From Schmidtea polychroa (lineage: Eukaryota), in NCBI GenBank assembly GCA_044892525.1, contig CM097887.1, positions 8,308,001 through 8,372,000 on the forward strand: a stretch of DNA of 64,000 nucleotides. Reading direction: 5' to 3'. A model generated the notes under the pieces. The model worked only from the letters and a program-made list of their open reading frames with translations. It was not told the origin of the DNA and made no database searches. This document shows positions 1-36,230 of the stretch, one piece after another. The number at the start of each line of letters is the position of its first letter. The first letter of the stretch is position 1. Position numbers and translations under genes: made by a program.

Positions 1-49
1 AGCAATAGCGAAAGCGGATAACGGAGATAACAACAATCAAGAACCGAAA

Positions 50-3000
50 ATGAATCAATTTATACCAGGAGCGCACCAAATTTTCAAACCACCACAAGGA
101 CGATCAAACGGGAATAATGGTAATCGTAACAACCCGAATAATGAGAACAATTTCAATAATCGGCGAAATATGAACGATAACAAGCAGTGCCGAACATGCG
201 GTAAACCAGGACACTGGGACAGAGATTGTTATAGAAATTCAAATTGTAATCGTTGCGGACGGCGTGGACATACCGAAAATGTATGCCAATTGCGAGGCTG
301 TTTTAACTGTGGTCAGCCAGGTCACATCTCCAGAGATTGCCGAGAAAGGGGCCAACAACAACGACCACCACAGCGAAATAATAATTATATAGCGAATCCG
401 CAACGACAAAGTAACCCTAACGAAGGAAAACAAATGAACGTTATGCAGGAAATTTCGCAGATGAAACAGATGATGCAACAAATGATGAGACCAAGACAAG
501 AATCAGCACCACAACAAACCCAGAATATACGTATGATGAGGAGTACCGAAAATCTCAACAATTATGAAGTGCATCAACATGTACAAGAATGGCAAAGGCT
601 ACAGGCCGAGGAAGAGAGGATAAAACAAGAACGCAACCAACAACGACAAGAACAACCATTGCGAATAAATATGATGAAGTTAGTAAAAGACATGAAGAGC
701 CAGTATTGCTACAATTACGGGAAAAGCCCAAGGGTAGTACCCATGACTGAACCAGAAAAAGTAAAGGAAATAACAACGGAAATGAAAACAGAGAATTCAA
801 CCACGATTTCAAAAGGAAACCAGAGAATTCAGAAAATATTCTGGAAAAAGATAAAGGATAAAATCGAAAAAGAACATAATAAAGCGAAAACCGAGACAGA
901 AGATGAAAATAACAAGAGCAAGGAACAAACCAGTCAACTAAACCACCAAATGCTACAAGAATCAGAATCAGAAGAAACAACAATATTCGAAAGAAAGAAA
1001 CTAAAGAGAGTACCAAGGATGAGAAACTTGCAAATCAATATGATGAAAAGGACAAAAGATGAAGCATCGTCAGACGAAGAAGAAGATTATGTAAGTAGTT
1101 TGGGTGGAGAAATACTACAGCCGAATGAAATAAGCGAACCCCCAAAAGGGGAAATCAAAGAGGAAGAAAGCGGAAACGAGATAACCAGTGAAAGTGAAGA
1201 CGAAGATATCGAAATAAAGTTGAGAAAAGCAAGGGAGGAAGCGATAAAACAGGTAGCCGAAATACTCCCAGTAGTAGTGAGAAACCAAGAGTTCATCGAC
1301 GTAATACCATTCAGGCGATTCGTGCAAAAAGTGATGAAATTGGAAAGAAACGAGAAAGATCTAATACCAAACGAGGAAAAATCAATTATAAAAAATTATA
1401 TGGAAAAAATGAAGCAGGCCGATACCACGCGGTATGTAATAAAAATTGGAACGAGTAGAGGACTTGAAAGAATGTGGATAAAAAATACAGTCACCGACGA
1501 ACTTTTCGATTGGATACGAGAACATTTGGGAAGTTCGAGAAAGAAAGAATATCTGTATCAATACCAAGGAGAACAGATCAAACCAGATATGCACTTAGTA
1601 GATGCACTAATATGGCCAGGAGAAACGCAAATACTGAAGTTGCATAAAGAAAAACAACCAGCCAACCTTTACGATTGGGCTAAAGATGCCAAGGCAGAAT
1701 ATGATTTTAATATCAAATTGAAATTAGAACAAATAAAACAATGTACTCTGAGACGAAACCTGGATAAGCTGATCAAACAAATTCAAGAACAAGTAGAAGA
1801 CAACTGGGATTTACTCATCACCAGACGAGCCCCAGCCATGTACGAACTAATGAGCCGGTTGCGAGATACAGAAATGCTCCGAATGAGTGATTGGAGAACC
1901 ATAAATTTGATCCACAAATATGGAAGGTTAAAAGAAACCCAGCCACAGAGGTTGGAAATAACCATATGGTTACCGAACGAAGAAAAACGACGAATAAAAA
2001 TGAGCAATCAGAGTACAGTGGATGACTTGGTATCAAAAATAAACCAAGAGATAACGGAAAAGGTACGTAGCGAAAGTAGTGATGGTATGGTGGATGATGT
2101 AGTCATGATGTACGATAAGATAATATTACGAGCGGAGGACGACACCTCGTTAAGCGAAATGGGTATGTGGGACAATCATCAGATAATCAGGATAGTACCA
2201 ATGGATGAATTCCGAACAAGAGATGTAACATATCAAAAAGAAATACGAGACCGGATGAAAACGTTATATCAAAAATCTACAGAAATAATTGAAATCCACC
2301 AACAATGGTTAAAAGAAAAAGAGCTACAAGGAAAAATCACGAAATTAAATACCAGATCCTGCAGACGAACCCCATGGGAAAGAGTGTGGAATGCAGAAAA
2401 TAAGGAATGGGAAATCCGGAAAGGAATCTTCGTAGAAACAGACATTGGTGAGACAGAAAGTGAATCGGAGGAAGAAGAAGAGGAACCCCCAGAATATGAA
2501 GAGGAAGCAAGGGGACAGACATCAGATGACGAAAGCGAGACGGATGTCACATCAGAAAGCGAAAATGAAGCGAGACATATTCATGCAATGAGGAAAAAGG
2601 AACGTGAATATGCTGATATGGACGGCGAGGAAGCGACGGAAGCAAGAGAACGAGAAGAGAAAGAAAGATATAAACAATTAGGCGATATTTTAGCAATGGG
2701 AGCGAAAAATCAAAAACGCCAGGTAGTAGCGTTGGCTAATATCATCTTAAAAACATCAGAGAATATCCACAATCTGAGAGGAATGGCAAAGGCAATAGAG
2801 GAATACCGGCAATATAATGAATGGTATCCAGAACAGCTAGAACAAATTATTCGAAAATGGAGAAATCAGGAATGGGCACAAGACACCCAGGAGAGGTATC
2901 ACATCCGAATCAAGTATCCGGACAAGAGCATCGAGGAACTAGAGGTGCATCCAACAACAAAAATTAGAGAATTAAAAAAGAAATTAGCATATGAAACTCC

Positions 3001-6000
3001 ATTCCATCTGCAACTGTTCGGAAAATCACTAGACGATAATGCAGACGTCGGGATAACACCCATGAGATTGGAAGAGACAAATGTATTAACAATGGCAGAA
3101 ACGTTGGGAAAACCGTTAAAAAGGAAAAGTAAAATTATTAAACCAACAAAAGGCAGTTTGAGTACTCCAAGTCCGAACAAAGCACCAAGTAAATCTAATG
3201 AAACTGAAGAAGTTGAAGAGATAATCCTGGAAGATAGTGACGATGAACCAGGAGAAAGATCACCGCTATTAGTGAGATGGCCGACAGGAGCCGAAATGTG
3301 GACTAATAACCAGCCATCAACGAGTTATCAACAACCAACGAAACTGAACATCAAAGAAATCATCGACAATACTACGGAAACCGAAACGGATGAACAATTC
3401 CAGAAGCAAAGAGAACCAACGAAAGTAACACCAGAAAGTCAAACCGACAAAATAATAGACGAATGGAATGAGTGGCTAAGAAATAACGATAGCTCATTAC
3501 CCAGAACGGATAACGAAAGAAATCCGAATTACGAAAATACCAGAGAAGCCGGAACGATGATGGAAAAACGGGCAAAAGGAAGACCGAAGAAACAAGGAGA
3601 AAAGTCTGAGTTCAAAACCAAAGAACAATTAAAGCAAGAACAAGGGCAAGTTCGATTAGAAAAATTGGATAAAATAGTATGGGATCTAAAGGAAGCCCAA
3701 CCAACGATCGAAAGAGGAGAAAAATGGATACGAGAATTGTTAAAAGATATGTTAATAATAACAAACCCACAACTTCGACGTTTGTGGCAACGGAAAGTAG
3801 CCAGTACGGAAGCTAGACAATTATGGCACACCATTTCGGGGATAATCCCAAAGTTAATCAAAGAGAAAACGAAAACCACCAAAACAGATTGGGACGAAAC
3901 AAAGAGAGTGATTGAGCAGCTCACGACAAATGCAAATGATGACGAGCATCACCTAGTGGTAATCACTTATTTGATGTATAATTTGATGGGACTAGCTGCG
4001 AGGAAAATACCAAATAAACAGTTTGCAAATCATGTGGAAATGACCGTTTCAATCATAGAGAATACTATTGAACCACATATTATTCGTGCCGGAGGATGGA
4101 AAAGACTTATACAAGCGCCACGGAAAAATGAGCAAGAAAGGTCGATGCAAGTTAGATTGAAAAAACTATTAAATGAACTAGAATGGGAACTACCAATGAA
4201 AGATCCCGCAAGCAGAAAAGCATCAATAAATTCGTTAATGATGACTATGATGATATGGATGTTGTGCACAAGTGGAGCAACAGGCTTCACCATCTACGAT
4301 TGTGATAATATGATAATGAGAGATAAATACTCATTGAGAGACATAGAAGAATGCAGACAAGCCTCACCCAACAAATTGGACATCGTGAGAACAAAAGTTA
4401 CTTACCATGTATATCAAGAATCAGATTTCATCAGAACGCAAGCAAGGGAATGCGTAGTATCAAAAAAGGTACTCGCATATTACTGTGGACAATATTCGTA
4501 TTCGACTCTTATACTACCCGGTCTGGATAAGGAAATCGTATCAATACAACGAGAGGATTGTAAAGAGCTATTTAGAACCGGAGCGCTAAAAATGCATAAC
4601 GGAGTGACAATTCACGGACAAACTGGAATGATTAAAACCGAAAGTGTTTACGTATCCGGAAAAGTAAAATCATCAGATGGGTCATGTAACGGGGGGACGT
4701 ATACGATCCGAGGCGAGGTAATATCGGGAGTTGTAGTGATCGAGTCTTACACGGTCGAATTAAAAGAATACGAAGCGCAATTTGACGCAAATAATTACCA
4801 AATGAAGACCAACCCAGCGTGTAAAGCTACAGAAAACGTATGCAGGACAGGAGTATCAACTATAATCTATGAAGCTAATACCCAAAAATGCCGACTCCAA
4901 CTGTTAAAAAGTGCTTTGTTCAATGAAGTAAAAGGAGAAATATATGAGAACGAGAACGACGAGGATGGAAACGACAGAGTGAGAATGCGAAATGGAAAAC
5001 CAATGCCACCATCTCCCAGAGAAAAGAGACTTTCAACGCAGAAGACACCAACAGCATTAATCACAGACGATCCAGATCTAGGTATGAGATTTATCAAAGA
5101 GAAAGAAACCACCAAATGTGACAGTATAGTATATAAAACCAATTACGCAGGTATCTACATGTCGAGACAAATAATCGATAGAGCAGTGGGAAAGATAGCA
5201 ACGGAGGACGTAAAACTGTACTTATATGCAAATAATAAAATGGATTTTCTATTTCATCGCGGACAAACGACCTTGCAAAAAGTATATTACGATCTGATAC
5301 AAAACGATTGTTCATTGAATAAAGAAATATTGAAAACAAAGCTAGCTATTGCGATAACGCACCCAGATAACACGATGCCATCACTCCCATTACCAGATGG
5401 ACACTTTGGTAGAATGGTAGGAGAAGTGATGTACACATACCAGTGTACCAAGACGTATGCACGAATGCCAGAAAAATCCATACTACCCGAAAAGAGATGT
5501 GCAAATGAATTAGAAATTCGTTATAAAGGACAAAATCGATTCGTCCAACCAGTCACTAGAATTATGAATCCAGTGGGTTTCTACCCAAATCTCTTTAACT
5601 GTTCTAATGCATACGGACCTTTGTATGAAAGACCCGATGGGAAATGGATGATGTTACCGGGAAAAACCATATCCGAGGAACCCAAGAAATTTGGATTAAT
5701 AGAACTCGCCACAGAGCTGGATTTCAAACCTATAGACGTGTCAAACGGTGGTATGTATTCCCCAGAAGACCTAGAAACAGCACGACTTAACGTACTCTTC
5801 CCAGCCAGACGAGAATCCATTTTGTCAAATATGGTCACAATAACTGGGGGCACAAACTATCAATCAGGCCCGAATTACGAGCTGCTATTATCACCAGACC
5901 ATTTTCAACAAGCTACGTCAAACATGATGAAAGCAATGTGGGGAAGATTCTTAGTTTTTGGACAAATGATGGCCGGGATATTAGGGATCATACTCATAAT

Positions 6001-9000
6001 TCAGATAGTCAGAGTAATACTAACACAAATGTTAGCTTGTTTCGATATATACAAGCGGGAAAAGAAAGTTAACTGGAAAATGATAGTAGGTTTCTTACCA
6101 TTTTTAGCTAAGACCATGGTATTACATGGCCACTCAAAAGACATTCATCGGATAAAGCGATTGATTAAAATATTAACAAAGATTAAAGGAACCGACGAAG
6201 AAGTAGGCAGACGATTCCGGAAAGCAATGTACGATGAAGCAACAAGACGACAATTGAAAAAGAATAAGCCAAAATTCTTGGACCGATTTAGAAGCCAATC
6301 ATCTAACAGCGATAGTGACGACGATGATAACGGGAACGATAAATGTCTTTATCCAAACAGAAACCCAAACGAAAAACCAATGGAAACGGCACCATATTGG
6401 GAAAAGGAAAAGACAAACACCTGGATCGCCAATGGAAGCTATATACCACCGGATATCGTGGGACCACAAGCAGCTTTGACCATGACACAAAATATGTATC
6501 CGCAATTACCGAGTCAACCCGGTATGCATTATATGCCAACACGACGTACCAAAAGTGTAGATCAAGCAGATGACGTAAGAACAATAGCAGCGATGAGTTT
6601 ACCTGGAGGTCCAGCAGTAACAGTTATGATTCAAATCAATGGTAAAGAAACCAATGCTATGATAGACACCGGAGCTAATGTATCAGCGATAGCGATTAAT
6701 CAAATTCCCAGTAAACACTGGAAAGATATCGAATCAACAACAATTCACATCATAGCATGTAGTAAAGAAACAGTGGACGTGGTCGGAAGATGGTGGACTA
6801 CATTGAGATACCAGGACAACGAAATTGAAACGTATTTGGCAGTAATACCAAAACTTAGCGTACCATGCATAATCGGAACGGATTTGATGCCAGAATTGTT
6901 AAAAGAAGTCGTAATTGACTTAACAACCATGTGTTTAAAAGACAAAACCGGTAGAATATGCAAAATGAATGCAGTCATCAGATGTCCAGAAAAAATAATA
7001 GTACCAGCAAAATCGCAGATGATTTGTCAGATAAAAGTGGATACGGGTATGGAAGGAGAAGTTATCTTTGAACCAAGCAAGTCATTTGAAAAGCGACGAG
7101 AATTACCACTCGCAAGAGAAATAATCACAATAAACCAAGAAGGAGTGATACCGCTCAACATCACGAATTTCGAAGAGGAAGACAAAATCATTTATGAGAA
7201 CGAAAAATTGGGAAGATTGACCCCAATGATGGACATAGAATTACCGAAAGTGACCAACGAGATGATCAAAGATGATGAATTATGGACAATAGATAGTATG
7301 TTGTTGACGAATGATGAAAAGAAAAAATTACACCGATTGTTGGTAGAATATAAAGATATATTCGCCATCTCAGATTTAGACTTGGGTACATGTGATGTTA
7401 CCTTACATGCAATACCACTCATAGACGAAACCCCAATTGCATTGAGACCATACAAGCTAGCAGAAATGCAGAAAGAAATAGCCGAAACAGAAGTACAAAA
7501 GATGCTAGACGCAAAAGTAATCGAACCAAGTTGCTCACCCTGGCAATTCCCAGTGGTCATGGTAAAAAAGAAAGATGGCACCCAACGATTCTGTATCGAT
7601 TATCGGAAGTTAAACGCAGTGACCAAGAGAGATACCTATCCATTGCCGGACATCAATGAGATGTTATTGATGTTGCAAGGGGCAGCATATTTTACTTCTT
7701 TAGATCTAAAAAGTGGATACTGGCAGATTAAAGTCAAAGATGAGGACAAAGAGAAAACAGCTTTCACGTTGGGACGAGATCTATATCAATTCAGGAAAAT
7801 GCCATTTGGACTGACCAACGCACCAGCATCATTTCAACGGTGTATGAACTTTGTCACCCATGGAATCAAACAATGTATGGTATATATTGATGATTTACTA
7901 ATCTATTCAGCGACATTTGAACAACATCTGGAAGATATCCGAAACGTATTTATTAGATTAAGACAGTGGAAACTCAAACTCAAACCATCAAAATGCGATT
8001 GGGCAAAGGAAAAAGTCACGTTTTTAGGACACATAGTGTCAGCTAAAGGAAAGGAGCCAGATCCAAGAAACATTGAGAAAATAAAAACATGTCCAGCACC
8101 GAAAACTGTCACCCAAGTTCAGGAATTTCTAGGATTATGCGGATACTATCGCAAATTTATCAAAAATTATGCAGGAATTGCAAAACCAATCCAGGAATTA
8201 GTAAAGAAGGATATTTCGTTCATTTGGGAAAAAGAACAACAACAGGCGTTCGAAACGCTGAGAGATAAACTAATCGAAGCACCTATCCTCGTACACCCAG
8301 ATTTTAAGAAGCCATTTCTATTGGCAACGGATGCAAGCGGGTACGCGGCAGGCGCGATTCTGGGACAATTAGACGATGAGGGAAAAGAGAGAGTAATCGG
8401 GTATTACAGTCGAACATTCAAAAAGCACGAAAAGAACTATTCGGTAACAGAACGAGAAGCATTGGCTATAATACAAGCTATCAAACACTTCCGATATTTA
8501 CTATGGGGACATGAGATATGCATAACCACAGATCATCAACCATTAGTGTGGTTAGGGCAACATAAAGAAGCGTCCAGTAGACTGATGCGATGGGCCATGC
8601 AATTGCAAGAATACTCCCCATTTATAAAATTCAAAGCGGGAAGAGCAAATGCCAACGCCGATTGTATGTCAAGATTTATTTTCCCAGATTTGGTGGATTC
8701 AGAAATGCAACGCATATGCTTAATAGTAGCGGAAGATTTGGATTTCTGTCAATTACGAAAGGACCAACAAGAGGACGCGGAATTAAAACAAATTATCGAT
8801 TATGTAAAAACCGGAAAGACAGAGGTATATGCGAAAGACCAAAAATTAAAAGAACATATGGATAAACACCGACACCGATATATTATAGAGAAAGATTGGT
8901 TGCTGATAATGGATGGGGAAAAACGATTAATGTGTATACCGGAAAACCGACGAAAAGAGTTACTAACGCAATATCACGATGGGAGATTGGGAGGACATAT

Positions 9001-13200: not shown

Positions 13201-13286
13201 ATCGAGTGAAACGACCAAGTGATATCAAACAAGAACAGTGGGTGGAGGCCTGGAACGCTCAGCGCCCTCCAAACTCACGTATATAG
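10215..13286 (+). CDS. Ankyrin-repeat protein (two ~340-aa-spaced ANK modules) fused to an internal signal peptide, FN3-like ectodomain and TM; first ATG 10221, frame open from 10149
   Basis: ANK motifs GDTPLH, GYTPLMIAA, KNALHHAI, RTPLQQAI, GETAMMYAA, GNSTLDWA; duplicated TWRxP..Y.INVNE motif (10695, 11715); hydrophobic segments 12285-12332 and ~13074-13145. Confidence 0.85.
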   Translation: MTMIENYANRERTHPLLRVVKSQWPILFTITDQYGDTPLHKLMKVGNNEQILETIEAFHDCKRSTEQTNNQGYTPLMIAANRGKTKDIITALLDTGSKITTQDHERKNALHHAIEGRSTEAFTSLMELLSYEDNREVGNMYDGLLTAIKEKLTTITGILITWRSPIQNDYMINVNEAFTRGENTLMREAMKGHHLFEIPNQLLERGIKFTNHKDEQLTKKRIDTFEKSLFQFTNQVRNKYWETVSVLYMMDTMNNIRENYLDIIQILTAEERINNPNGKKTKIRYEKSRESKSTTNQTVINNVIETKSMSIDQEAIIRKAKEVFFEEMLELSDEIILSKIIKAVHTYARDQTTGLDIGKIKTFLPRAFTMVTKDSRTPLQQAILAAKENRAITIVRILGDMGEETNTKNEQGETAMMYAAITKIHPKTLHILHQSGSKLDERSNEGNSTLDWATIQPNLEMIRFICKNATKEEVENMCKNTSQFQWNTVRKNLEAMKLLLTWRVPQNNKYAINVNEFYENGENAMVKNTLTKGGTPKIILVVLNREDLKFTQNQNEQQRIGKHRRMQLRELVKEWNRKRHAATGRKEFEFEAKLARNRVLTAYRRLLNDINVEDDILNDSGGDKHDDNNGKGRKEDKEKREPEEGKPENKDSDTKREGNSPGTKTKEEEKSNNGKQRVCLPFTNKEIETNMILMIIMLTMIELVTAHGGTRTIKETKEAENQDSKEDELKQEKKKQAQEQQWDLKEEWDLKERCILGRCMSRAYQKLVLINEDTEPITEVRIQEAYRNRDGKRITNVKGKEVHLGKGGEVVITQLQPRKEHKVCISRLGPGERCHQYVTQQQPPKEYTVCIWRNESKRECRRYPGKRGKKRKNHDEKDEGGKHKKTGEEAQDNYVSEEEMEKIQKMAKEGMNEEIARIREMMKGNGKRGNEKSTEAISTLTNKEKPESISVKQMMWISGIIITGAFLIITGGTIKIIKDKRHRGELEMTRIRNFQHRVKRPSDIKQEQWVEAWNAQRPPNSRI

Positions 13287-13446
13287 AAAGGAATATGACT
13301 GTATATAATTGTAAAAAGTAAGTATATCTTATGTATATAACAGTACTATATCTTTATATAAGCGCGGTATCAATATTATACGATAACGGGAATCATAAAA
13401 TAAAATTAAATTTACATAAGAGTTGAAAAGTGTATATAAATTAGGA

Positions 13447-13806
13447 ATGGATCAAGGAAATAACGAAATGAACCACAATACAGTAACTGAAGAATTATGG
13501 AAGCAACAATGTGCCGTATTAGCACAATTAGTGTCCAATTTGCAAGAACAAGGACTGACGATGCACAGAAACCTGATCGAGAGTATGAACAGAGGATTTA
13601 GTTATTTGAAGATAATTGAAGACCAGAGGTTAAAAATCGAACAAATGCAAAGAGAGATAGAGAGGATAACCCAATATAGCCGTCGACAGGAAATTGAAAT
13701 AGACCGAATGAGGGAGGAAGCAGAACAGATAGAAATAGAAGACTGGTCGGAATGGCTAATGAATAGAGAGGAGAGCGGACACGAAGCCGACTCTTCCGAA
13801 CCCTAA
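13447..13806 (+). CDS. Small coiled-coil protein of unknown function (accessory ORF)
   Basis: Intact ORF with heptad-like segments; ATG at 13447 preceded by TTAG|GA; same composition as the element. Confidence 0.6.
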   Translation: MDQGNNEMNHNTVTEELWKQQCAVLAQLVSNLQEQGLTMHRNLIESMNRGFSYLKIIEDQRLKIEQMQREIERITQYSRRQEIEIDRMREEAEQIEIEDWSEWLMNREESGHEADSSEP

Positions 13807-13891: not shown

Positions 13892-15280
13892 ATGGATAAA
13901 CGACAAAGAGAAGAGTTCAGAGAGATTGTCGAGCAAGTCCGAAAATCTACAACGATCAGAATACACAAACATGTTATGTGCGGAATATGTGAAAAGTTGT
14001 TAAAGGAACCTCACCAAACGCAATGTGGATGCCGAGCATGTAAAGAATGTATCAGTGAAGCAATAAAGAATAGACCACAGAGGTGCCCGGTGTGCAAAGA
14101 GACACTAATATCGAGTTTAGAAGACACTAACGAGGATAAAGCCGCAGTGAAAGACATGTTAAACACCAACCTGGGATGCAAAAATGCCCCATGCGAATGG
14201 AAAGGAGTAATATGGAAGGTAGTACAACATATGGGAGAATGTATGTACAGAATTGGCCAGTGTGAAAGGTGCCATAAAACCATTCGAGCAAGCGAAGGAA
14301 AAGAGCATCAAAGGCAGTGTGAAGAGAGATTAGAAAGATGTGAACACTGTGGAGAAATAGATACGTGGATAAATCTCACCCTCAAACATCACAATGTCCC
14401 AGAGGAGAGAGTATGTGCAGAGTTCAGTGGGGAATGCCCAAACGGATGTAACCAAGGGGAAATAATGAAGGTGGCACAGCATCTAAGAGAATGCGAAAAG
14501 AAAAGAATGACATGCGTACTAGGTAGATGGGGTTGTCAGAAATTACTACACCGAGGTGAGTTACCACATCATTTAGTAGAAAATGCTTCAACTCACGCAG
14601 AAATGTGGTCGACTGCGTTACGAGAAAGCGAAGAGAAAGTAAAACAAATGGAGATAGAGATAACATCGTTGAAAGTGTTAGTCAAAGAACTACTAGAAGA
14701 AAGGGAAGCGTTCGAAGAAGCCCGAGCAAACATAAAGATGCAAATAAACCGAATAGAAATCAGTAATAATCAGGCCAAGGAGCTACATCAGAAAATACGG
14801 GAAATAAATCTAAATGAGATAACCCCAACAGCACCCTACATATGGAAAATAACGGGAGTAAAAGAAAGAATACGAAAAGCAAAAACCGGAGAAGAGACAA
14901 GAATAACAAGTCCTGCATTCCATTCTTGGAAAAATGGGTACAAAATGAAAATGAAGATATATCCCAACGGGGACGGAACCGGATTAGATACGCACTTTTC
15001 GATTTTCTTTCTGTTATGTAAAGGAGAATACGACGAAATATTAGAATGGCCGTTCCAGGCAAAAATCGATATTACTCTGATGAACAACCAAAGTATACAT
15101 GAGCAAAGCTTCAAAACAACGGGGAATCAAATAGCTTACCAGAGGCCCCTCAACGAAGAAGGATCAGCAACAGGAGCACCTACGTTCATCTCACAACAAA
15201 GAGTAGAAGATATGGCGAGAAATGATACCATATATATCAAGATGACCGTGAGGAAAGAGGAGAAGGGTAGAACGGAGTAA
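13892..15280 (+). CDS. Intronless TRAF-like protein (RING, TRAF zinc fingers, coiled coil, MATH)
   Basis: RING CGICEKLLKEP.QT.CGCRAC..C...CPVC; zinc fingers C.N..C.WKG....VQH..EC; MATH YIWKI...SPAF..W.NGYKM.MKIYPNGDG.GL.THFS.FF.L.KGEYD.IL.WPF. Confidence 0.95.
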   Translation: MDKRQREEFREIVEQVRKSTTIRIHKHVMCGICEKLLKEPHQTQCGCRACKECISEAIKNRPQRCPVCKETLISSLEDTNEDKAAVKDMLNTNLGCKNAPCEWKGVIWKVVQHMGECMYRIGQCERCHKTIRASEGKEHQRQCEERLERCEHCGEIDTWINLTLKHHNVPEERVCAEFSGECPNGCNQGEIMKVAQHLRECEKKRMTCVLGRWGCQKLLHRGELPHHLVENASTHAEMWSTALRESEEKVKQMEIEITSLKVLVKELLEEREAFEEARANIKMQINRIEISNNQAKELHQKIREINLNEITPTAPYIWKITGVKERIRKAKTGEETRITSPAFHSWKNGYKMKMKIYPNGDGTGLDTHFSIFFLLCKGEYDEILEWPFQAKIDITLMNNQSIHEQSFKTTGNQIAYQRPLNEEGSATGAPTFISQQRVEDMARNDTIYIKMTVRKEEKGRTE

Positions 15281-15473: not shown

Positions 15474-16529
15474 ATGACACAAGAGAAAATAACCGAAACT
15501 GCGATAGCCCCAACCAATGTCAACAAGACACAAATTCCCCGAGAACATAACAAAAAATGGAACAAAGTAATGTTCCAACTAACTAATCTCACCCGAAACC
15601 ACATCGAAGAAACTAGAGAAGATGAGAATAGTCAATACCAATGGTTAATACACAACTTAAGAGCGGAAGCAGAAGCATGCAAAAGAGCATCAAAATGGGC
15701 GTCACTAGAAAATACCCGCCAAGAAGCACACAGCCACTACTTAAAGCAGCTAGTGCAGGAAGCGAGAAAGAGACTTACCGATGAGAACACCAAGCGCGAA
15801 GCGGAAAAACAAATAGAAGACAGGAAAATGATGCACTTAGTGGCAGAAGCGAGAAAATGGAAAAGACAAAACAGAGAAATGAAAAAAGAGATGAAAGAAT
15901 TGCCCATGAGACTCGGATATGAGAGCGAACAGGGCAAATGGGAGGAGAATTTAATAATAAAGGAAGAATTGAAAAGGTTGAGAAAGGTCGCCGCCCGAAG
16001 CCAAACCTGGCAAACAAAGGCTATGGAGTTTGAGCGACATTTGGCAATGAAGTGCGACATAAGAGAGCACGAGAATGCCGCAATGGAAGAGATGATAACC
16101 CAACAAGCGGGACGGGTTGTGGAATTAGTAAATCAGGTAGAAGAGATGAAAAGAGACCTTAATGGATTACAAGGATCGCTGGAACAAAGAAACATGGTCC
16201 TAGCGGGAAAAAACAAAAAATTAGAAAACGAAAGGAAAATGTACACCGAAAATATTAAAAACTTAGAAATAGAAATTGAAAAATGGAAGGGCGACGAGAA
16301 AGTCAAGGCCCTAGACAAACAGATAGAGGCGAAAGATGAAGAGACAAGGTATCTCACCTATCTGCTCGACGAGGAATTGAATATCACTCGAGCTCTAAGA
16401 GACGAAATTAATGAATTGAGAGCTCAAATCCCCCAATATTACCTACCATACGACCCTATTGCGATACAGTTACATTCCGCGGTCGATAGTGATGAAGGTT
16501 ATGTAGGCCAGGAGGAAACCTTCGTATGA
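15474..16529 (+). CDS. Long coiled-coil protein of unknown function (accessory ORF)
   Basis: 351-aa intact ORF, E/K/R-rich heptads. Confidence 0.7.
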   Translation: MTQEKITETAIAPTNVNKTQIPREHNKKWNKVMFQLTNLTRNHIEETREDENSQYQWLIHNLRAEAEACKRASKWASLENTRQEAHSHYLKQLVQEARKRLTDENTKREAEKQIEDRKMMHLVAEARKWKRQNREMKKEMKELPMRLGYESEQGKWEENLIIKEELKRLRKVAARSQTWQTKAMEFERHLAMKCDIREHENAAMEEMITQQAGRVVELVNQVEEMKRDLNGLQGSLEQRNMVLAGKNKKLENERKMYTENIKNLEIEIEKWKGDEKVKALDKQIEAKDEETRYLTYLLDEELNITRALRDEINELRAQIPQYYLPYDPIAIQLHSAVDSDEGYVGQEETFV

Positions 16530-16699: not shown

Positions 16700-17398
16700 A
16701 TGAAAATCGAGGAAATGATAGAAATTATGAGCGACGTAGAAGAGGGAGAGATTGAGGCAGAAACAACAGAAACACAAACGCTAAAGGCCGAGTTACGGGA
16801 AGAGAAATACGAAAACGGGAGATTAATAAACAAATACCTGGAGGACCGGAAAATGATAAAGGTGTTAAAGAAAGAGTGCGAAGCGTTGGGGGAAATAAAA
16901 AGAGAAACGGAAGAGGAAAATGAATGGCTACACGAACAAAGGAAGCGAGGGAAAAACTGGGAAAAGATAGCGGGAGAACTATGGAAAGAGAGGGCAAGCT
17001 TCAAAGCAAAGGAGGTAATCCAAGACTACTGGAAAACTGAGGCGAAGGAGCGCCAAACAGCTATAAATAAATTAAAACGACAACTAGAAGAAAACCAACG
17101 GGAAAGTAAAGAAATGAGGAAGTGGGTCCGCAAATATAGAGAAATAGAAAGAAAACATCAACAACAAAATTACCTGCAAGAAAACGAACAAGATCTCCTA
17201 CAAATCGAGCTAAAAAGAAACCTTGAAAAGAAAAGGGAAGAAATTAGACGCTTGGAAAAAGAAATTAGACATCTAAAGAGAGAAGCCCGTGAAAAAGACC
17301 GACAATTGGAAATGCTGCCCGAGTTAAGACACAGGGTAATTAAAGCAGAGTCCACCTTGATGAGAATCGGCGAAAATAATCCAAATCAGAACCATTAA
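16700..17398 (+). CDS. Coiled-coil protein of unknown function (accessory ORF)
   Basis: 232-aa intact ORF, E/K/R-rich heptads. Confidence 0.7.
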   Translation: MKIEEMIEIMSDVEEGEIEAETTETQTLKAELREEKYENGRLINKYLEDRKMIKVLKKECEALGEIKRETEEENEWLHEQRKRGKNWEKIAGELWKERASFKAKEVIQDYWKTEAKERQTAINKLKRQLEENQRESKEMRKWVRKYREIERKHQQQNYLQENEQDLLQIELKRNLEKKREEIRRLEKEIRHLKREAREKDRQLEMLPELRHRVIKAESTLMRIGENNPNQNH

Positions 17399-17438: not shown

Positions 17439-18107
17439 ATGTATAATAGTATCATGCGAGGCGAGATGATGATAACAATGATGGTATTGATGATTCTGAT
17501 GGAAAGCAAACAAATAGACGCCCAACCGAAAATCGTACGAGATTACCGAAATCAAAATCAAGAACCTAAACAAGAATCCAGTCAATGCACATACCCGATG
17601 ACCGTAAAAACCCATATCATCCAAACCATTCAATCAACCCGATCACACATCAACAACATCCAAACAATGTGTAAAAAGAATCCCATTTGTAAAATGATAA
17701 ACAAACAAATCCTCGAACAAATCCAACAATTCGACCAGTTGGAACAACAAATGCAACAAGAGAATTTTGGAAATCTGGTAGAAAAGCCAAAAATACCTCC
17801 CGAAATCAATGACACCCATTATCTCATATATGTGGTGATCGCAGAAACCCTCCTCCTATGTCTACCAATATTCATGAAAATTTACGAAGTTCGAAATAGA
17901 TGTAGAGTCTCGACATCAATAAGAGTAACCTCGAACCAAAATCCTCAAGAAGTGCCCCTGACAAATCTTAACCCATCCCCATTCCGACCTCGAACCCCGA
18001 GTAATCAACCAATCCAGCCGAAATCTAATAGTCAGACCTATCTCAACATCAATACCCAAACCAACCAACAGCCGCCAGCAGAAGCATCAATGGTTAACAG
18101 TTCATAA
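17439..18107 (+). CDS. Putative small type I membrane protein (accessory ORF)
   Basis: Signal-like MMITMMVLMILMES..IDA, Gln-rich ectodomain with 3 Cys, TM YLIYVVIAETLLLCLPIFM, Pro/Asn-rich tail; AATAAA follows at ~18214. Confidence 0.65.
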   Translation: MYNSIMRGEMMITMMVLMILMESKQIDAQPKIVRDYRNQNQEPKQESSQCTYPMTVKTHIIQTIQSTRSHINNIQTMCKKNPICKMINKQILEQIQQFDQLEQQMQQENFGNLVEKPKIPPEINDTHYLIYVVIAETLLLCLPIFMKIYEVRNRCRVSTSIRVTSNQNPQEVPLTNLNPSPFRPRTPSNQPIQPKSNSQTYLNINTQTNQQPPAEASMVNSS

Positions 18108-18669
18108 ACTCTAACTCAAACATTTGTGTTATTATATGTGGAAACTTTTATTGTATGTACAAACTATCACCTTAAGTGATACTTGCTTGATCTTGCTTTG
18201 ACCTTGATCTTACAATAAAAATTTTATCATTGTTGTATAATTTTCGTGTTCGTGTTATATTTTTTTTTGAATGAATGAATTAAGTTAATTATGCAATTGC
18301 GGGACGCAATTTTGATGGGTCCCCGAGTGATTTGTTGGGCTGAGTCGAAAATTTAATCGTTGAAAAATAAGAAAGTAGGGAAGTAGAACATTAAGAAAAA
18401 TAAAAATAAAATAAATAAAATCAGAAATAAAATAGAATAAGGTATAAGGAAAATAATAATTAAGACATAAGAATTAAAACAAAAAATAAAATTAAGAAAA
18501 GATTAAAATAGAACAAGTTGACAAATAAATAAAGAGGAATTCAAGAAATAATAAGGAAATTAAGGAAATAAATAGAAAAACATATTAAAAATAAAGAAAA
18601 TAAGGAGAAAACAACCTAAAAACAAGAAAATTATATTAAATTAATAGAAATAAGCGGTACTCAACTCTG

Positions 18670-18703
18670 ATTGGTCCGCACAAATAAGAATTTGATATAT
18701 ATA
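18670..18703 (+). promoter_or_regulatory. LTR core promoter: inverted CCAAT box (ATTGG 18670) and TATA (TATATATA 18696-18703)
   Basis: Both motifs are conserved in the solo LTR (25166, 25192); a conserved AG|GTAAGA donor lies ~50 nt after the TATA. Confidence 0.55.
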
Positions 18704-19220
18704 CAACTACCAAAAACATTAAATTTACTGTTAACCCCGAGCATTTCATAGGTAAGAAAAAATGTTTACTGTTTCTACTGTTAACCCCGAGCATTTCATA
18801 GACATCTACAACTCACGGAGACTTATTTCAAGGATCAGCAATACAAGTAGAGCAACAGTTAATTCGAAAAACTTCACAGCAATTCGAACTCAGTCACAGC
18901 AATCGACATTCGACGAATTATCATCAGACTAATTTGGAACGACTAACGTTAATTTTCCGATTCAGCCTAATTCCATAGTAAGGGATTTTTATTTATGATA
19001 TTGTTTTTCGAAGTTAATAGTAAATATGTATATTTAATGAGTAATTAAACTTTTAAATTTAACCAGACTCTCTTTTCATTTGATCCTGAATAACGATTTT
19101 GATAAAGTAAATAATTTAAATGTTTAAAAGTATTTATTGGTAACAGGTGAACTCTTACATAATTTTTATGGATATTTATTTTGAAGTGATAGTTTTATGA
19201 TTTCTAATATTAACGAGAAA

Positions 19221-19350
19221 CGTGGCGTTGAGATACTCCATGTCATGGTGTGAGGTGCCTTCGGGAGCTCAGCCGGTGGACATGGAGTATTTCAATCACG
19301 CAGCTAGATTGGGCCGAAATGTGAAGGCTTCTTCACGGGTCCAATTGCTG
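19221..19350 (+). ncRNA. Conserved structured RNA element (two adjacent hairpins) in the LTR
   Basis: 17-bp stem 19228-19244/19279-19295 with 5 compensatory pair changes versus the copy at 25740-25807; cUUCGg apical loop; second hairpin 19301-19350. The strand is assumed from LTR orientation and G-U pairs. Confidence 0.75.
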
Positions 19351-21209
19351 AAGGACTTAAAATCTGTCAGAGTACCGAAATATAGACCGAAAGGAAACCT
19401 TATGAAATTTTCGAAAATAGGATATGTGCTTCACAGCGACTGAGGGAGTTCTCCTATTAACTCTGTATTGTCCAGAGTCGTCTTATAAGACATTCATGCC
19501 ACTTCTGTCTATAAATCCGAACTTACCATGTGGGGGAAGATACCATTAAACATCCATCGCTGGTTTTTCTAACATATCGAGAAGTTGAAATTGCATTCGG
19601 TAGATTTTTGAAAAAGTAAATCTAATTTAGGTCATCTCTTTCAGATGCGACATCCAAATCTTAGCATATGATGAGGAATTTACAATAAAGGAAAAGTAAA
19701 ACATAAAACCACAATAATACTGTATTCAATCACATATATTAACAAAATCTGGTAATACCCATTGAATAATTTTCATGCTGTCGCGTCGAAATATCCACTA
19801 CTGAAATATGCTTCATAGAGTCTAGTTGGCTGGTTCGTAGAGATCTTCCATCGTTCAAAAGCATCCAATATTGAGGAAATTACGAGTCGTAGTAAATAAA
19901 TCCAACATCATAAGCTCAGATGGGAATCGACACGCGATGTAACATTTGCAGTTCGCTCAGTACGGTTGATAGTTACAGATAAAATTTCCATCGAATAGGC
20001 ACCCATACATACAGACATACTGCTAACATAACTATGAGTAGCGTCATCCGGTCAGAAATATGCATGAGAAACAGCAGAATCATTCCGAATGCCTCTCACC
20101 GCAGGGAATGCCGCCATGTGTCACCCTCTCTAAGATTCTTAGTGTGTGAGTAGTAATCAGTGGTCCTATTAGATAATGCTGACATGAGATGTGACTTCCA
20201 GATGACTGACTCTTAAATTTCACTACTGATAAAGGTCATTCGTACCACTAAAAAGATAAGCCAAAATAACCAGTAACCGACTACTAAGATAAGAGACTCT
20301 CTAAAGTGCACTCATTAAAGATAATTTTGCTTAAATTAAATATTCTAAATAAAAATCGAAATTGTTGAAGGGGTATTTTAATTAATAACCGAAAATTCAA
20401 ACCAAACTTTATAACTAAACCATAGGAAGTTTCACCTAAGTGTTGTAGAGGTTTATCGTAATTCTGATTAGATGTTACAAATAATAGTAGTAGCCTTTGA
20501 GCCAAATTTAAATTAACTAAAGCATCCACAGGAATTTTTGGGTTATAAAATAGCTAGTAATATTGTACTTAAATTTCTCATATTCCATGTAAACTACGTA
20601 TCGCAATAGAAAACTAAATCCGATAACAAATTATTATGTAATTACAATGTTTTTTTACGATGCCATATTTCTACGACGATATCACCGTATGGTATGGATA
20701 AGGGGTGATCATAAAATAGTGACGTATAGTTTATACGAAATTACGAGTTGTTACTTATTCCGCTACTCGAGGTAAGGGTGCAAGTTTTTACTAGTCGCAT
20801 TTGGTCCAAAAACCTTATTTTGCATTAGAATAACAACAAATAATCAGCGAAATTTAAACGAAGTGTAGTATAGTGTATTTGTAATGAAATAGGTTTATTC
20901 ACTCCGGCATGAACAAATCCGTAAATTGCCTTTATGTGCGATAGATAGAAATCCAACTCGAACGCGATAGACGAAAATTAAAATTTTTACAAATAATTTG
21001 CATTCGTCAGGGAAGCAATCAGGGCGTTGAGGAATAATTTTTGTAAAGGATACGTAAAATATTAGTAATCAAGGGTGAAGGGAAGGATCCTGTTTCATCG
21101 ACTCGTCTTGTTTTCTTCCAGCACTAAGTATCCAATAGCGAATAAACCGTATATCTGATCCGAAATTTTTAGATATAGTCACCATAGTTTTCTTCTTTAG
21201 CCATCCATT

Positions 21210-21962
21210 ATGTTATCAAACAACAAATCAGCTTTACGTCCCTGCTTCTCCTGCTCAGATAAAAATGCAGTGATTAAAGATCTTCAAGCCCAGATCGGTC
21301 GATATAAACGAAAAATCGACGAGCTGGAAGGGACATGGTTTAGTCCCGCTCGGATGAAGGAGATCCAAAAGAAGCTCGATCGTAGCGAGCATTGCCGGGA
21401 CGCGCTAATATCTGAGAGCCGTGCCCAAAGAAGTCTAATCAGAGAACAATCCGAGGCACTGCATAAGGTTTACGTGCAGGCGGCTACAACCCGAAAGATC
21501 GTGCAGATTCCCATCCGAGAGGCCGATGACATCTTTCCGCCTCATCACAACCTTTCCTCGAATCCATCTCCACCGTTCAAGAGACCGTGCCGAGACTGCG
21601 TCGAAACCGAATGGTCCCCCAAGCGTCCAGATGTTGTCATCACGGGTACCAGTAAGCCCCCCACTGCTAGTCCATCTGTATCAGTCACCCTTCTACAAGT
21701 GGCATCTTCAAACAAACCCAAGCGCAAACAACTCTCTCGAGCAGAGCGCAAGAAGAGACAGCGCGAGCGCGCCACTGCAAAGCCAAACATCCCATCAACA
21801 GAGGACTCAACCAACGGTGGTAACTCTCACGTGTCCATCGACCTAACAACGGGACCCTCAGCGCGAATCATATCAGCCGCTGGCGTAAGGTGGGAAGAGA
21901 ACGCTTCCGAGTTTTTCAACCTCGACGAATTATTCGCCGACACTGAATGGGAGAAACAATAA
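21210..21962 (+). CDS. LTR-encoded 250-aa protein (CxxC, coiled coil, Arg/Lys-rich motif, acidic C-terminus)
   Basis: Intact in both LTR copies, ~84% aa identity by manual count with many synonymous changes; polypyrimidine splice acceptor TTTTCTTCTTTAG just upstream; AATAAA at 22086. Confidence 0.85.
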   Translation: MLSNNKSALRPCFSCSDKNAVIKDLQAQIGRYKRKIDELEGTWFSPARMKEIQKKLDRSEHCRDALISESRAQRSLIREQSEALHKVYVQAATTRKIVQIPIREADDIFPPHHNLSSNPSPPFKRPCRDCVETEWSPKRPDVVITGTSKPPTASPSVSVTLLQVASSNKPKRKQLSRAERKKRQRERATAKPNIPSTEDSTNGGNSHVSIDLTTGPSARIISAAGVRWEENASEFFNLDELFADTEWEKQ

Positions 21963-22085
21963 AACCCCAGTGGCGGTCAGGATGAGGAACAAGGATCCGA
22001 TCTATGTTGATTATGATGTTTTCTCTTCTTTCGACAAACATTAGTAAAGTGTACAGCTGAATCCTGGTGTCATAACGTTGAAATT

Positions 22086-22091
22086 AATAAA
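22086..22091 (+). terminator. Polyadenylation signal of the LTR transcription unit
   Basis: AATAAA followed by a TTGTTGTCTT GU-rich element, conserved in the solo LTR (~28351). Confidence 0.6.
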
Positions 22092-22226
22092 TCTTGTTGT
22101 CTTACACGTTTTCGTTCATGAATAATTAGACTTTAATTAAGTGGGTTGAGTAGAGAACCCGCAAGATCTAGTGAGAATTTCCCAATTTGCATTCAGCGAA
22201 TTCCTGATAGGTGGTTGTGTAAGGAA

Positions 22227-22410
22227 ATGGACGTAAGCCCTTCTATCGGCAGTCGTGAATGGGAAGTCGAGGCCTCAGCAAGGAGTAGTTTTAAGGCAGA
22301 AGCTCACCTGCTTGCTGGCGTCTCGCCTGCATAGTGCAGTACCAACGTGAAGTGATTCACGGGCACTATGTTGGAAGAAAGTTATGTGGGGTTTCACTCC
22401 AGGTTGACAA
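22227..22410 (+). ncRNA. Near-invariant structured block near the LTR 3' end (U5-like region)
   Basis: 184 nt with 2 differences versus 28491-28674; helices CATAGTGC/GCACTATG, CGTGAA/TTCACG capped by GNRA (GTGA vs GTAA), CAGCAAG/CTTGCTG. Confidence 0.5.
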
Positions 22411-22812
22411 ATCGGTGGCACCTTTTATTCGAGATGGACAATCAACCCTTAGACCCGCCAACATGGTAGAATGGTCAGCCGAGGTGTGACCCCAACATCA
22501 ACAACAATAACGAATTCCAAACAATATAACTTTATTGAATAACGATTGTAATGACACAAATTACTCAATGCAACTCAAACGTATTCGGGTGCTTATTAAA
22601 ACCCTTTGGAAGGAACTTTGGGAACACTTTAATTATACGACCACTCAAGATGACATTGAAAAATTACAAACAAACGAGAGTTTACATTACGTAACTAAAT
22701 GTAAAACGATTGTAGAAACTATTGTAAATAAATTCGGTCAAAATACACATGTCAATTTTAAGAATGATTTTAAAATACCATTTTTTAATGTTATGGATTA
22801 GATGTTTTTATT

Positions 22813-36228: not shown

Positions 36229-36230
<2 letters not shown>

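What the first reader, a model, noticed from the sequence alone, without database searches (positions are those of the whole stretch)
1..22497. Giant virus-like gypsy retroelement carrying a cell-death and immune-signalling toolkit
Seen: one co-oriented, essentially intact unit of >22 kb (>26 kb if the unseen 5' LTR is also ~4 kb). It combines Gag/Pol, a fusion glycoprotein, UBLs, a Bcl-2-like domain, an ankyrin protein, a full TRAF and an LTR-encoded ORF. Established: Bcl-2, TRAF and ankyrin/IkB mimics are typical cargo of large DNA viruses, not of ordinary Metaviridae. Giant LTR elements are known (plant Ogre, planarian Burro), so size alone is not new. Inference: this is an infectious, complex-retrovirus-like lineage of invertebrate Metaviridae that manipulates apoptosis and TNF/NF-kB signalling. 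Overlap with Burro cargo must be checked before claiming novelty.
Basis: partly seen in the sequence, partly recalled or inferred. Interest (0 to 1): 0.95.

Follow-up and report, generated by a model that had tools for sequence, protein, structure and literature searches.

The report
Burro-type giant gypsy retroelement copy
The region is a real, apparently intact copy of a giant virus-like gypsy retroelement that carries an envelope gene and immune and cell-death-type cargo, but this unusual design was already described for the 'Burro' elements of planarian flatworms, so it is a new example and not a new kind.

Summary
Bases 1-22497 are the 3' 22.5 kb of one co-oriented LTR element, cut by the window's left edge.

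- **Main reading frame:** one frame is open from base 2 to 10162. It holds three CCHC knuckles, a ubiquitin-like domain, an in-frame fusion glycoprotein, protease, RT, RNase H and integrase.
- **Downstream ORFs:** six compact ORFs follow. They include a two-module ankyrin protein and a full RING-zinc finger-coiled coil-MATH TRAF.
- **LTR:** a 4165-bp LTR (18333-22497) closes the element. It carries a 250-aa ORF.
- **Not established here:** the Bcl-2-like domain and two of the three UBLs stay below significance.

The novelty claim fails. This design is published for Burro/GYPSM1 elements of planarians (PMC6431247): gag-UBL-BCL2-env-pol in one polyprotein, plus TRAF/MATH, ankyrin and coiled-coil motifs. 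An anti-apoptotic role is reported for Burro1's IAP module.

Points I did not find in the papers I could read:
- The env folds like class III fusion proteins and matches chu-like virus glycoproteins.
- TRAF is a separate gene downstream of pol.
- The LTR ORF is under strong purifying selection (dN/dS 0.07 against a neighbouring solo LTR).
- A 187-nt LTR block is nearly invariant.

The host was not identified. I did not fetch other copies or reference elements.

The parts
1..22497 (+). Part of the LTR element that lies in the window. It runs from inside gag to the end of the 3' LTR. The 5' end is beyond the window.
   Evidence: One strand, A-rich skew, LTR boundary at 22497.
2..10162 (+). ORF1 polyprotein. 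It is open from the first full codon of the window. The first ATG is at 50 and the stop at 10160-10162. No stops or frameshifts lie within the window.
188..340 (+). Three CCHC zinc knuckles (nucleocapsid-like part of gag).
   Evidence: (zf-CCHC 5e-15).
1433..2209 (+). Two candidate ubiquitin-like stretches (aa 462-535 and 635-720). Suggestive only.
   Evidence: i-E about 0.3 against a profile of the third UBL. Searches found nothing significant.
2882..3097 (+). Ubiquitin-like domain (aa 945-1016).
   Evidence: ubiquitin E 0.045; it aligns with P0001 residues 767-842, which score ubiquitin 4.4e-5 and Rad60-SLD 1.5e-3.
3662..4129 (+). Candidate Bcl-2-like helical segment (aa 1205-1360). Not established.
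   Evidence: Bcl-2 E 0.043, below cut-off. Searches were negative or non-significant.
4220..6052 (+). Envelope-type fusion glycoprotein, in frame. It has a signal-like hydrophobic stretch (aa 1391-1410), an ectodomain with 14 cysteines, and a membrane anchor (aa 1965-2001).
   Evidence: PF24664, 1e-70. (14 of 14 Cys conserved in five relatives).. (model matches herpesvirus gB, GP64 and chu-like virus glycoproteins).
6623..6898 (+). Aspartic protease, with the DTGA motif.
7562..8614 (+). Reverse transcriptase (YIDD motif) and a single RNase H.
   Evidence: (Ty3 Gag-Pol 7q5b, 6e-177).
8936..9919 (+). Integrase, with an HHCC zinc finger, a DD35E core and a GPY/F-type C-terminal part.
10215..13286 (+). 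ORF2, 1023 aa as listed from 10215; the first ATG is two codons in, at 10221. It has two ankyrin modules. Its C-terminal third has two hydrophobic membrane-type stretches.
13423..13806 (+). ORF3, 127 aa. Acidic, with no recognised family.
13892..15280 (+). ORF4, 462 aa. A full TRAF homologue with RING, TRAF-type zinc fingers, coiled coil and MATH/TRAF-C.
15474..16529 (+). ORF5, 351 aa. Charged and coiled-coil-like.
16700..17398 (+). ORF6, 232 aa. Very charged and coiled-coil-like.
   Evidence: (Fib_alpha 1.3e-3, below cut-off).
17439..18107 (+). ORF7, 222 aa. Hydrophobic N-terminus and one membrane-type stretch (aa 126-151).
18333..22497 (+). 3' LTR, 4165 bp. It has TG..CA ends with a 7-bp inverted terminal repeat and is followed by TCAA (22498-22501).
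21210..21962 (+). LTR-borne ORF, 250 aa, with no recognised family.
   Evidence: dN/dS 0.07 against the solo-LTR copy; 103 of 150 differences at third positions. Searches found no relatives.
22224..22410 (+). Nearly invariant 187-nt block of the LTR. It has 3 differences from the solo LTR.
   Evidence: Fold and Rfam searches were not significant.
24825..28761 (+). Solo LTR of a related lineage, 3937 bp. It is flanked by CCAA on both sides and carries the homologous 249-aa ORF at 27474-28223.

Best explanation
This is a copy of a Burro-type giant Ty3/gypsy (Metaviridae) endogenous virus-like retroelement. Its 5' LTR, leader and capsid-coding start lie beyond the left edge of the window.

Shown:
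- One uninterrupted polyprotein frame joins gag knuckles, a ubiquitin-like domain, an envelope-type fusion glycoprotein and PR-RT-RH-IN.
- Six further intact ORFs and a 4.2-kb LTR with its own conserved ORF follow on the same strand.

Inferred mechanism:
- The element is transcribed from the unseen 5' LTR.
- The polyprotein is threaded through the ER membrane at the internal signal-like stretch. The glycoprotein ectodomain then faces the lumen, while gag and pol stay cytosolic.
- Signal peptidase and the element's protease cut it into parts.
- Particles reverse-transcribe and integrate with a 4-bp duplication.
- The downstream proteins (ankyrin, TRAF homologue, coiled-coil proteins, small membrane protein) and the LTR protein act on host ubiquitin, TRAF and cell-survival pathways or on the element's own expression. 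They are made from spliced or internally started RNAs.

The full length is probably about 28 kb.
For: - Pol is Ty3-like: 7q5b at 6e-177, with all Pfam pol domains and catalytic motifs.
- Env lies in frame between gag and pol: PF24664 at 1e-70. All 14 cysteines are conserved in five relatives. The model's confident half matches class III fusion proteins and chu-like virus glycoproteins.
- The cargo lies inside the LTR boundary and shares ORF1's composition and codon use.
- Relatives P0001-P0005 have the same gag-UBL-env-PR-RT-RH-IN order. P0001 holds an ankyrin module inside its polyprotein.
- The solo LTR with a CCAA/CCAA duplication shows that the family integrates like an LTR element and has at least two lineages in this genome.
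- The published Burro description matches point by point.
- BURRO1 is expressed and is under PIWI control.
Against: - The host was not identified. The one clear host exon is a GC-rich island (GC3 0.64). From my own recollection, not checked here, that would be unusual for the AT-rich coding sequence of Schmidtea.
- No BIR and no dUTPase were found, although both are reported for Burro1.
- TRAF is a separate ORF after pol, not part of ORF1.
- The Bcl-2-like call is not significant.
- I saw no obvious polypurine tract before the LTR.
- No direct comparison with Burro sequences was made.
- Expression, processing and membrane topology are inferred only.
Confidence: 0.85

Rival explanations
1. A shorter ordinary gypsy element lies next to single-copy host genes (ankyrin, TRAF, coiled-coil genes). 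The large size would then be an illusion.
For: TRAF and ankyrin genes are common host genes. No relative of ORFs 3, 5, 6 and 7 was found.
Against: - The LTR starts only after ORF7, at 18333.
- ORFs 2-7 are intronless, tightly packed (89% coverage) and on the same strand.
- They share ORF1's A-rich codon use (r 0.66-0.90, A3 0.39-0.48). The host exon differs (r 0.23, A3 0.15).
- Relative P0001 carries an ankyrin module inside its polyprotein.
- Burro is reported to carry TRAF and ankyrin motifs.
Confidence: 0.03
2. The element is a currently infectious enveloped virus that spreads between cells or individuals.
For: - The glycoprotein is intact, with a signal-like stretch, an anchor and all 14 conserved cysteines.
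- All enzymes are intact.
- The accessory gene set is of the kind seen in complex viruses.
- The family has relatives in aquatic metagenome contigs.
Against: - Sequence alone cannot show particles or transmission.
- Many env-bearing LTR elements spread only within the genome.
- The polyprotein gives gag, env and pol in equal amounts, which is unusual for particle assembly.
- Burro1 is reported as a host-controlled and even host-beneficial resident.
Confidence: 0.2
3. The open frames are kept by selection on the host (co-option or mutualism), not by the element's own replication. The cargo would then act as host survival genes.
For: Burro1's IAP module is reported to protect planarian stem cells (citing Lee et al. 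2026, not read). The LTR ORF is under strong purifying selection.
Against: - Selection on the host would not keep all of gag, env, PR, RT, RH and IN open over 10 kb.
- The solo LTR and this element sit at different sites, so the conserved LTR ORF travels with the element.
- This view is compatible with the best explanation rather than exclusive of it.
Confidence: 0.15
4. An assembly chimera joins unrelated pieces.
For: Giant repeats are hard to assemble.
Against: - There are no N runs.
- Composition and skew are uniform across 1-18100.
- One frame is open over 10 kb.
- The LTR termini are clean, and a matching solo LTR lies nearby.
Confidence: 0.02

Closest known systems
Burro1-4 / GYPSM1 giant gypsy-like LTR retroelements of planarians (Grohme et al. 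2018; Jurka 2007; Arkhipova and Yushenova 2019, PMC6431247)
   Same: - Giant size and kilobase-scale LTRs.
- One huge polyprotein with CCHC gag.
- A ubiquitin/SUMO-like domain.
- Env in frame between gag and pol, with hits to mononegavirus-type glycoproteins.
- PR-RT-RH-IN order.
- TRAF/MATH, ankyrin and coiled-coil (Smc-like) motifs.
- An AT-rich host flank.
   Different: - TRAF is a free-standing full-length gene after pol. In Burro1 it is inside ORF1, and in the Dugesia tigrina element it is upstream.
- No BIR and no dUTPase were detected.
- The BCL2 call is not significant here.
- The part of ORF1 in the window is 3386 codons, against 4873-5140 aa in the published elements.
- The host is unknown, and no direct sequence comparison was made.
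Anakin, a BEL/Pao element of mosquitoes with a captured chuvirus glycoprotein (PMC7642597, as cited in PMC12440569)
   Same: An LTR element carrying a glycoprotein of the chu-like virus type.
   Different: Pol here is Ty3/gypsy-like, not BEL/Pao. Env is fused in frame upstream of pol. There is a large accessory gene set.
Errantiviruses (insect gypsy, ZAM and others)
   Same: Metaviridae with an envelope gene and a 4-bp target duplication.
   Different: From general knowledge, their env is a separate ORF after pol and is of the baculovirus F type. Here the only Pfam family at E up to 1 is PF24664, and the model matches class III proteins.
Mouse mammary tumour virus sag, an ORF inside the LTR (general knowledge, not tested)
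   Same: A protein-coding gene lies wholly within the LTR.
   Different: No sequence relationship was found. The function here is unknown, and the virus family is different.
Cargo of large DNA viruses: viral Bcl-2 homologues and poxvirus ankyrin proteins (general knowledge)
   Same: The same classes of host-interaction domains.
   Different: Here they ride on a reverse-transcribing element. The Bcl-2 membership is unproven.

Membership tests
Metaviridae (Ty3/gypsy LTR elements) | Pol order PR-RT-RNase H-IN, with RT closest to Ty3/gypsy | tested here: met
   One search gives the domain order. In one search the best solved structure is Ty3 Gag-Pol 7q5b at 6e-177.
Metaviridae (Ty3/gypsy LTR elements) | LTRs with TG..CA ends and a short target-site duplication | tested here: met
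   The termini are inverted over 7 bp. The solo LTR is flanked by CCAA on both sides. The left flank of the full element is outside the window.
Metaviridae (Ty3/gypsy LTR elements) | Primer binding site and polypurine tract | tested here: inconclusive
   The primer binding site lies outside the window. I saw no clear purine run just upstream of 18333.
Burro-type giant elements | Gag (CCHC) and pol in one giant ORF | tested here: met
   The frame is open from base 2 to 10162. The knuckles are at 188-340.
Burro-type giant elements | Env in frame between gag and pol, related to mononegavirus-type fusion glycoproteins | tested here: met
Burro-type giant elements | Ubiquitin/SUMO-like domain upstream of env | tested here: met
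   One domain at aa 945-1016, supported through the aligned relative. Two further candidates are not significant.
Burro-type giant elements | BCL2-like domain between the UBL and env | tested here: inconclusive
   Pfam E 0.043, below cut-off. Searches were negative or non-significant. The segment is predicted to be all-helical, and P0001 shares a GGW motif.
Burro-type giant elements | MATH/TRAF and ankyrin motifs | tested here: met
   Both are separate ORFs after pol.
Burro-type giant elements | BIR (IAP) module and a dUTPase between PR and RT, as in Burro1 | tested here: not met
   No such Pfam hit in any ORF (E up to 0.01) or in the PR-RT spacer (E up to 1).
Burro-type giant elements | Nucleotide or protein similarity to the catalogued Burro1-4/GYPSM1 sequences | not tested
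Burro-type giant elements | Host is a planarian (Dugesiidae/Geoplanoidea) | not testable with these tools
   The flank is about 69% A+T, which fits. The host exon is GC-rich.
TRAF family | RING, TRAF zinc fingers, coiled coil and C-terminal MATH/TRAF-C | tested here: met
   The one database relative, P0037, carries zf-TRAF.
Class III viral fusion proteins (gB, GP64, rhabdovirus G) | The fold of the ectodomain | tested here: inconclusive
   In the model, only residues 40-300 are confident (pLDDT 70-89; overall 50.7). Every row shown in the table (top 50 of 81 hits at E up to 0.001) is gB or GP64, but TM-scores are about 0.2. BFVD hits reach 5e-23.
Errantivirus | Separate env ORF after pol, of the baculovirus F type | tested here: not met
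   Env lies upstream of pol in ORF1. The only Pfam family is PF24664.

The most novel reading that the evidence does not exclude
The 4-kb LTR is more than a promoter block. It carries a selection-maintained gene for a 250-aa protein with no detectable relatives. The protein has a coiled-coil N-terminus, a basic stretch and an acidic C-terminus. Next to the gene lies a 187-nt block that stayed almost invariant while the rest of the LTR diverged by 20-27%. Together these could form a regulator-plus-target module not yet described for giant Metaviridae. Add the free-standing TRAF gene and the shared 9-mers in the gene spacers, and the element would have a complex-virus-like expression programme.
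Probability: 0.3. Interest if true: 0.6.

Novelty: new member of a known kind. Interest (0 to 1): 0.4.

Why it matters
Burro-type elements are the largest known LTR retroelements. They join a retroelement core to an RNA-virus-type envelope protein and to host-signalling cargo. An apparently unbroken copy gives a clean map of that gene set.

This copy adds four testable details:
- the fold class of the envelope protein;
- a stand-alone TRAF gene;
- an LTR-borne gene under purifying selection;
- an almost invariant LTR block.

It does not open a new category. The architecture and the apoptosis/ubiquitin idea are already in the literature, and one cargo module of Burro1 has reportedly been tested functionally.

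Tried and rejected
- **Bcl-2-like segment.** Five tests gave nothing significant, so the call stays open:
  - PDB sequence search: nothing.
  - Exhaustive HMMER search of 1.84 billion representatives: no hit.
  - Single-sequence AlphaFold model: pLDDT 46.
  - Foldseek on that model: no hit below E 1. Mcl-1, Bax and F1L appear only among the noise.
  - Pfam scan of relative P0001: no Bcl-2 among the hits shown.
- **UBLs 1 and 2.** The PDB search found nothing. A profile of UBL3 gives only i-E about 0.3.
- **LTR ORF, ORF2 C-terminal part, ORF3 and ORF7.** No family in Pfam or PDB. PHROGs, which did not include the ORF2 part, also gave nothing. The LTR ORF also found nothing in the word-indexed protein search.
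- **TRAF search to identify the host.** One unnamed hit only.
- **Internal paralogy among the ORFs.** None found.
- **Further fragments of the element in 22498-64000.** Only the solo LTR.
- **Rfam and tRNA scans.** Nothing.
- **RNA fold of the invariant block.** z -1.77, not significant.
- **Papers not held.** Grohme et al. 2018 and Lee et al. 2026 could not be read. Their content is cited second-hand.
- **Rejected readings.** Cargo as adjacent host genes, an assembly chimera, and errantivirus membership.
- **Rule check.** Consensus lines printed by the alignment and tandem-repeat tools were not used. Whole protein sequences of six relatives were shown by get_proteins after the permitted protein search.
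Full report
**What is there**

The window has no N runs. From base 1 to about 18100 the + strand is strikingly A-rich. AT skew is 0.26-0.45 and GC is about 0.39. The flank beyond 22.5 kb has skew near zero and about 31% GC.

One reading frame is open from base 2 to the stop at 10160-10162. That is 3386 codons. The longest open stretch in 300 shuffles of the same bases was 225 codons. The first ATG is at 50, and the 16 codons before it hold no stop, so ORF1 runs off the left edge of the window.

Relatives carry 270-450 residues of gag ahead of their zinc knuckles. The capsid part of gag, the leader, the primer binding site and the 5' LTR are therefore most likely outside the window. By inference the whole element is about 28 kb.

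**ORF1**

Pfam gives these domains in this order:

| Domain | Residues | E-value |
|---|---|---|
| Three CCHC knuckles | 47-97 | 5e-15 |
| Monjiviricetes_fusion glycoprotein (PF24664) | see env below | 1e-70 |
| Retroviral protease | 2192-2283 | 3e-9 |
| RVT_1 | 2505-2663 | 3e-35 |
| RT_RNaseH | 2751-2855 | 4e-39 |
| Integrase_H2C2 | 2963-3021 | 3e-20 |
| rve | 3038-3135 | 2e-12 |

- The DTGA, YIDD, HHCC, DD35E and GPY/F motifs are all present.
- A profile of ORF1 and five relatives has Ty3 Gag-Pol (7q5b) as its best solved structure, at 6e-177.
- No stop or frameshift interrupts ORF1 within the window.
- No dUTPase is seen between protease and RT.

**The envelope protein**

It lies in frame between gag and pol. 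It has three parts:
- a signal-like hydrophobic stretch (aa 1391-1410);
- an ectodomain of about 555 residues;
- a strong membrane anchor (aa 1965-2001).

All 14 ectodomain cysteines are conserved in five relatives that are 34-42% identical.

An AlphaFold model made with that six-row alignment is confident only for residues 40-300 (pLDDT 70-89; overall 50.7).
- Against the PDB, every row shown in the table (top 50 of 81 hits at E up to 0.001) is herpesvirus gB or baculovirus GP64. The best E is 1.5e-6, but TM-scores are only about 0.2.
- Against BFVD, the best matches are glycoproteins of chu-, qin-, xinmo-, nyami- and rhabdo-like viruses of arthropods, from 5e-23 down.

I read this as a class III fusion protein of the chu-like virus type, with moderate confidence. 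The published note on Burro stressed a likeness to gypsy Env as well as hits to mononegavirus glycoproteins. Here the only Pfam family at E up to 1 is PF24664.

**The two soft calls**

*Ubiquitin-like domains.*
- The third candidate (aa 945-1016) scores ubiquitin at only E 0.045 by itself.
- It aligns with residues 767-842 of relative P0001, which score ubiquitin 4.4e-5 and Rad60-SLD 1.5e-3.
- The first two candidates reach only i-E about 0.3 against a profile of the third. They find nothing in the PDB.

*Bcl-2-like segment (aa 1205-1360).*
- It scores Pfam Bcl-2 at E 0.043 and 14.8 bits, against a cut-off of 31.4.
- It finds nothing in the PDB and nothing among 1.84 billion representative proteins.
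- Its single-sequence model has pLDDT 46, and that model gives no Foldseek hit below E 1.
- It is predicted to be all-helical, and it shares a GGW motif with P0001.
- The literature reports BCL2 at this position in Burro, so I lean towards yes. My tests do not establish it.

**Downstream genes**

Six ORFs on the same strand cover 89% of 10163-18332. Five open stretches of at least 200 codons lie on the + strand and none on the - strand.

| ORF | Coordinates | Length | Content |
|---|---|---|---|
| ORF2 | 10215-13286 | 1023 aa | Two ankyrin modules (Ank_2 5e-21), each similar to the ankyrin module inside the polyprotein of P0001; two membrane-type stretches in its last third |
| ORF3 | 13423-13806 | 127 aa | No recognised family |
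| ORF4 | 13892-15280 | 462 aa | Complete TRAF: TRAF-C matches TRAF2/1/3 at 1e-28, RING-zinc fingers match TRAF6/5 at 2e-14 |
| ORF5 | 15474-16529 | 351 aa | Highly charged, coiled-coil-like; a plausible counterpart of the 'Smc' motif noted in GYPSM1 |
| ORF6 | 16700-17398 | 232 aa | As ORF5 |
| ORF7 | 17439-18107 | 222 aa | Small membrane protein |

ORFs 2-7 share ORF1's codon use (r 0.66-0.90; A at third positions 0.39-0.48). The nearby host exon does not (r 0.23; 0.15). The LTR begins only after ORF7. The cargo therefore belongs to the element.

**LTR and neighbour**

The 3' LTR is 18333-22497 (4165 bp). Its ends are TG..CA with a 7-bp inverted repeat, and TCAA follows it.

A second copy lies at 24825-28761. 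It is a solo LTR flanked by CCAA on both sides. The two LTRs compare as follows:
- 73% identical over the first 1.75 kb;
- not alignable in the middle;
- 80% identical over the last 1.3 kb.

No other piece of the element lies in the rest of the window. The family thus has at least two lineages here.

Both LTRs carry a homologous ORF (21210-21962 and 27474-28223).
- 209 of 249 residues are identical.
- 103 of 150 nucleotide differences fall at third codon positions.
- dN/dS is 0.07 and dS is 1.24.

This is a real gene under purifying selection. It has no detectable relative. Its composition (GC3 0.53) is unlike that of the internal genes.

Just downstream, 22224-22410 differs from the solo LTR at only 3 of 187 positions. 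The binomial P is 1e-14 at 20% divergence. The RNA fold is not significant (z -1.77) and Rfam has nothing. This block could be a cis-acting R/U5 element or the product of recent recombination between lineages. I cannot tell which.

**What is known**

The design is published. Arkhipova and Yushenova (PMC6431247) summarise Burro/GYPSM1 of Schmidtea mediterranea and a relative in Dugesia tigrina:
- elements of more than 30 kb;
- an ORF1 of 4873-5140 aa;
- gag with CCHC knuckles;
- MATH_TRAF_C;
- a SUMO/ubiquitin-like domain;
- BCL2;
- env in frame between gag and pol ('the first case');
- protease, dUTPase, RT, RNase H and integrase;
- BIR, ankyrin and Smc motifs.

They also propose that Burro elements are proviruses that meddle with apoptosis and ubiquitination. 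BURRO1 is expressed in a tissue-specific way and is held down by SMEDWI-2 (PMC8532177).

PMC13465017 cites Lee et al. 2026, which I could not read. It reports that Burro1's RING+BIR module protects planarian stem cells from caspase-dependent death, and that the expansion covers Geoplanoidea and Dugesiidae.

The protein search adds that relatives with the same layout, 42-45% identical over about a third of ORF1, occur on 9-26 kb contigs. Most of these are ENA assemblies. One is an NCBI record filed under a Flavobacteriaceae bin.

**Differences from the published picture**

- TRAF is a free-standing gene after pol.
- No BIR and no dUTPase were found.
- The env looks like a class III protein.
- The LTR gene, the invariant block and two 9-mers concentrated in the gene spacers are features I did not find described in the papers I could read. 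The 9-mers are TGTATATAA (5 of 6 window matches) and TGTAAATAA (4 of 7). I picked them after looking at the spacers, so they are post hoc.

**Left out**

I did not extend the contig to the 5' side. I did not fetch other copies, the contigs of the relatives or Burro reference sequences.

For the same reason no RT/IN tree with named reference elements was built. The host was not identified:
- None of those searches returned the window's own proteins, so they may not be in that collection.

**Verdict**

The feature is real, large and apparently intact. It is best filed as a new member, or possibly an already catalogued subfamily, of the known Burro-type giant Metaviridae. The interest is moderate.

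Noticed in passing
window 24825-28761: Solo LTR of a related lineage, flanked by a CCAA/CCAA duplication, 2.3 kb downstream of the element. Its ends are 73-80% identical to the element's LTR and its middle cannot be aligned.
   Followed up: yes
window 22224-22410 and 28488-28674: A 187-nt LTR block with only 3 differences between LTRs that are otherwise 73-80% identical. The RNA fold is not significant and there is no Rfam family.
   Followed up: partly
window 13284-17441 (spacers between ORFs 2-7): Two 9-mers are concentrated in the AT-rich gene spacers on the + strand: TGTATATAA (5 of 6 window matches) and TGTAAATAA (4 of 7). They were chosen post hoc. They may be gene-junction signals.
   Followed up: partly
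window 21210-21962 and 27474-28223: The LTR ORF has a composition (GC3 0.53, A3 0.24-0.28) unlike the internal genes of the element and closer to the host exon. This hints at a different origin or different constraint.
   Followed up: partly
window 30338-31465: Host-type exon with C1 and RhoGAP domains (RhoGAP 1.3e-7). It forms a GC-rich island (0.44-0.58) in surroundings of 0.19-0.33 GC, with GC3 0.64.
   Followed up: partly
window 37046-38439: Remnant of a hAT-type transposase, in pieces (hAT dimerisation domain 1.1e-5).
   Followed up: partly
window 36283-36380 and 63903-64000: A 98-nt direct repeat, 100% identical. The second copy is cut by the window end.
   Followed up: no
window 22541-22652 and 40260-40382: An inverted pair of about 120 nt, 84% identical. 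It is probably a small dispersed repeat. One copy lies just outside the element's LTR.
   Followed up: no
window 51695-51771 and 52592-52668: A 77-nt direct repeat, 99% identical, 897 nt apart. The first copy overlaps the 3' part of an unassigned 201-aa ORF (51377-51982).
   Followed up: no
window 36150-36300, 39400-39600, 42660-42800: Long (TAA)n-type microsatellites in the AT-rich flank.
   Followed up: no
protein P0005: A relative of ORF1 with env, PR, RT and IN is filed in NCBI as a hypothetical protein of a Flavobacteriaceae metagenome bin. It is most likely a eukaryotic retroelement contig that was binned wrongly.
   Followed up: no
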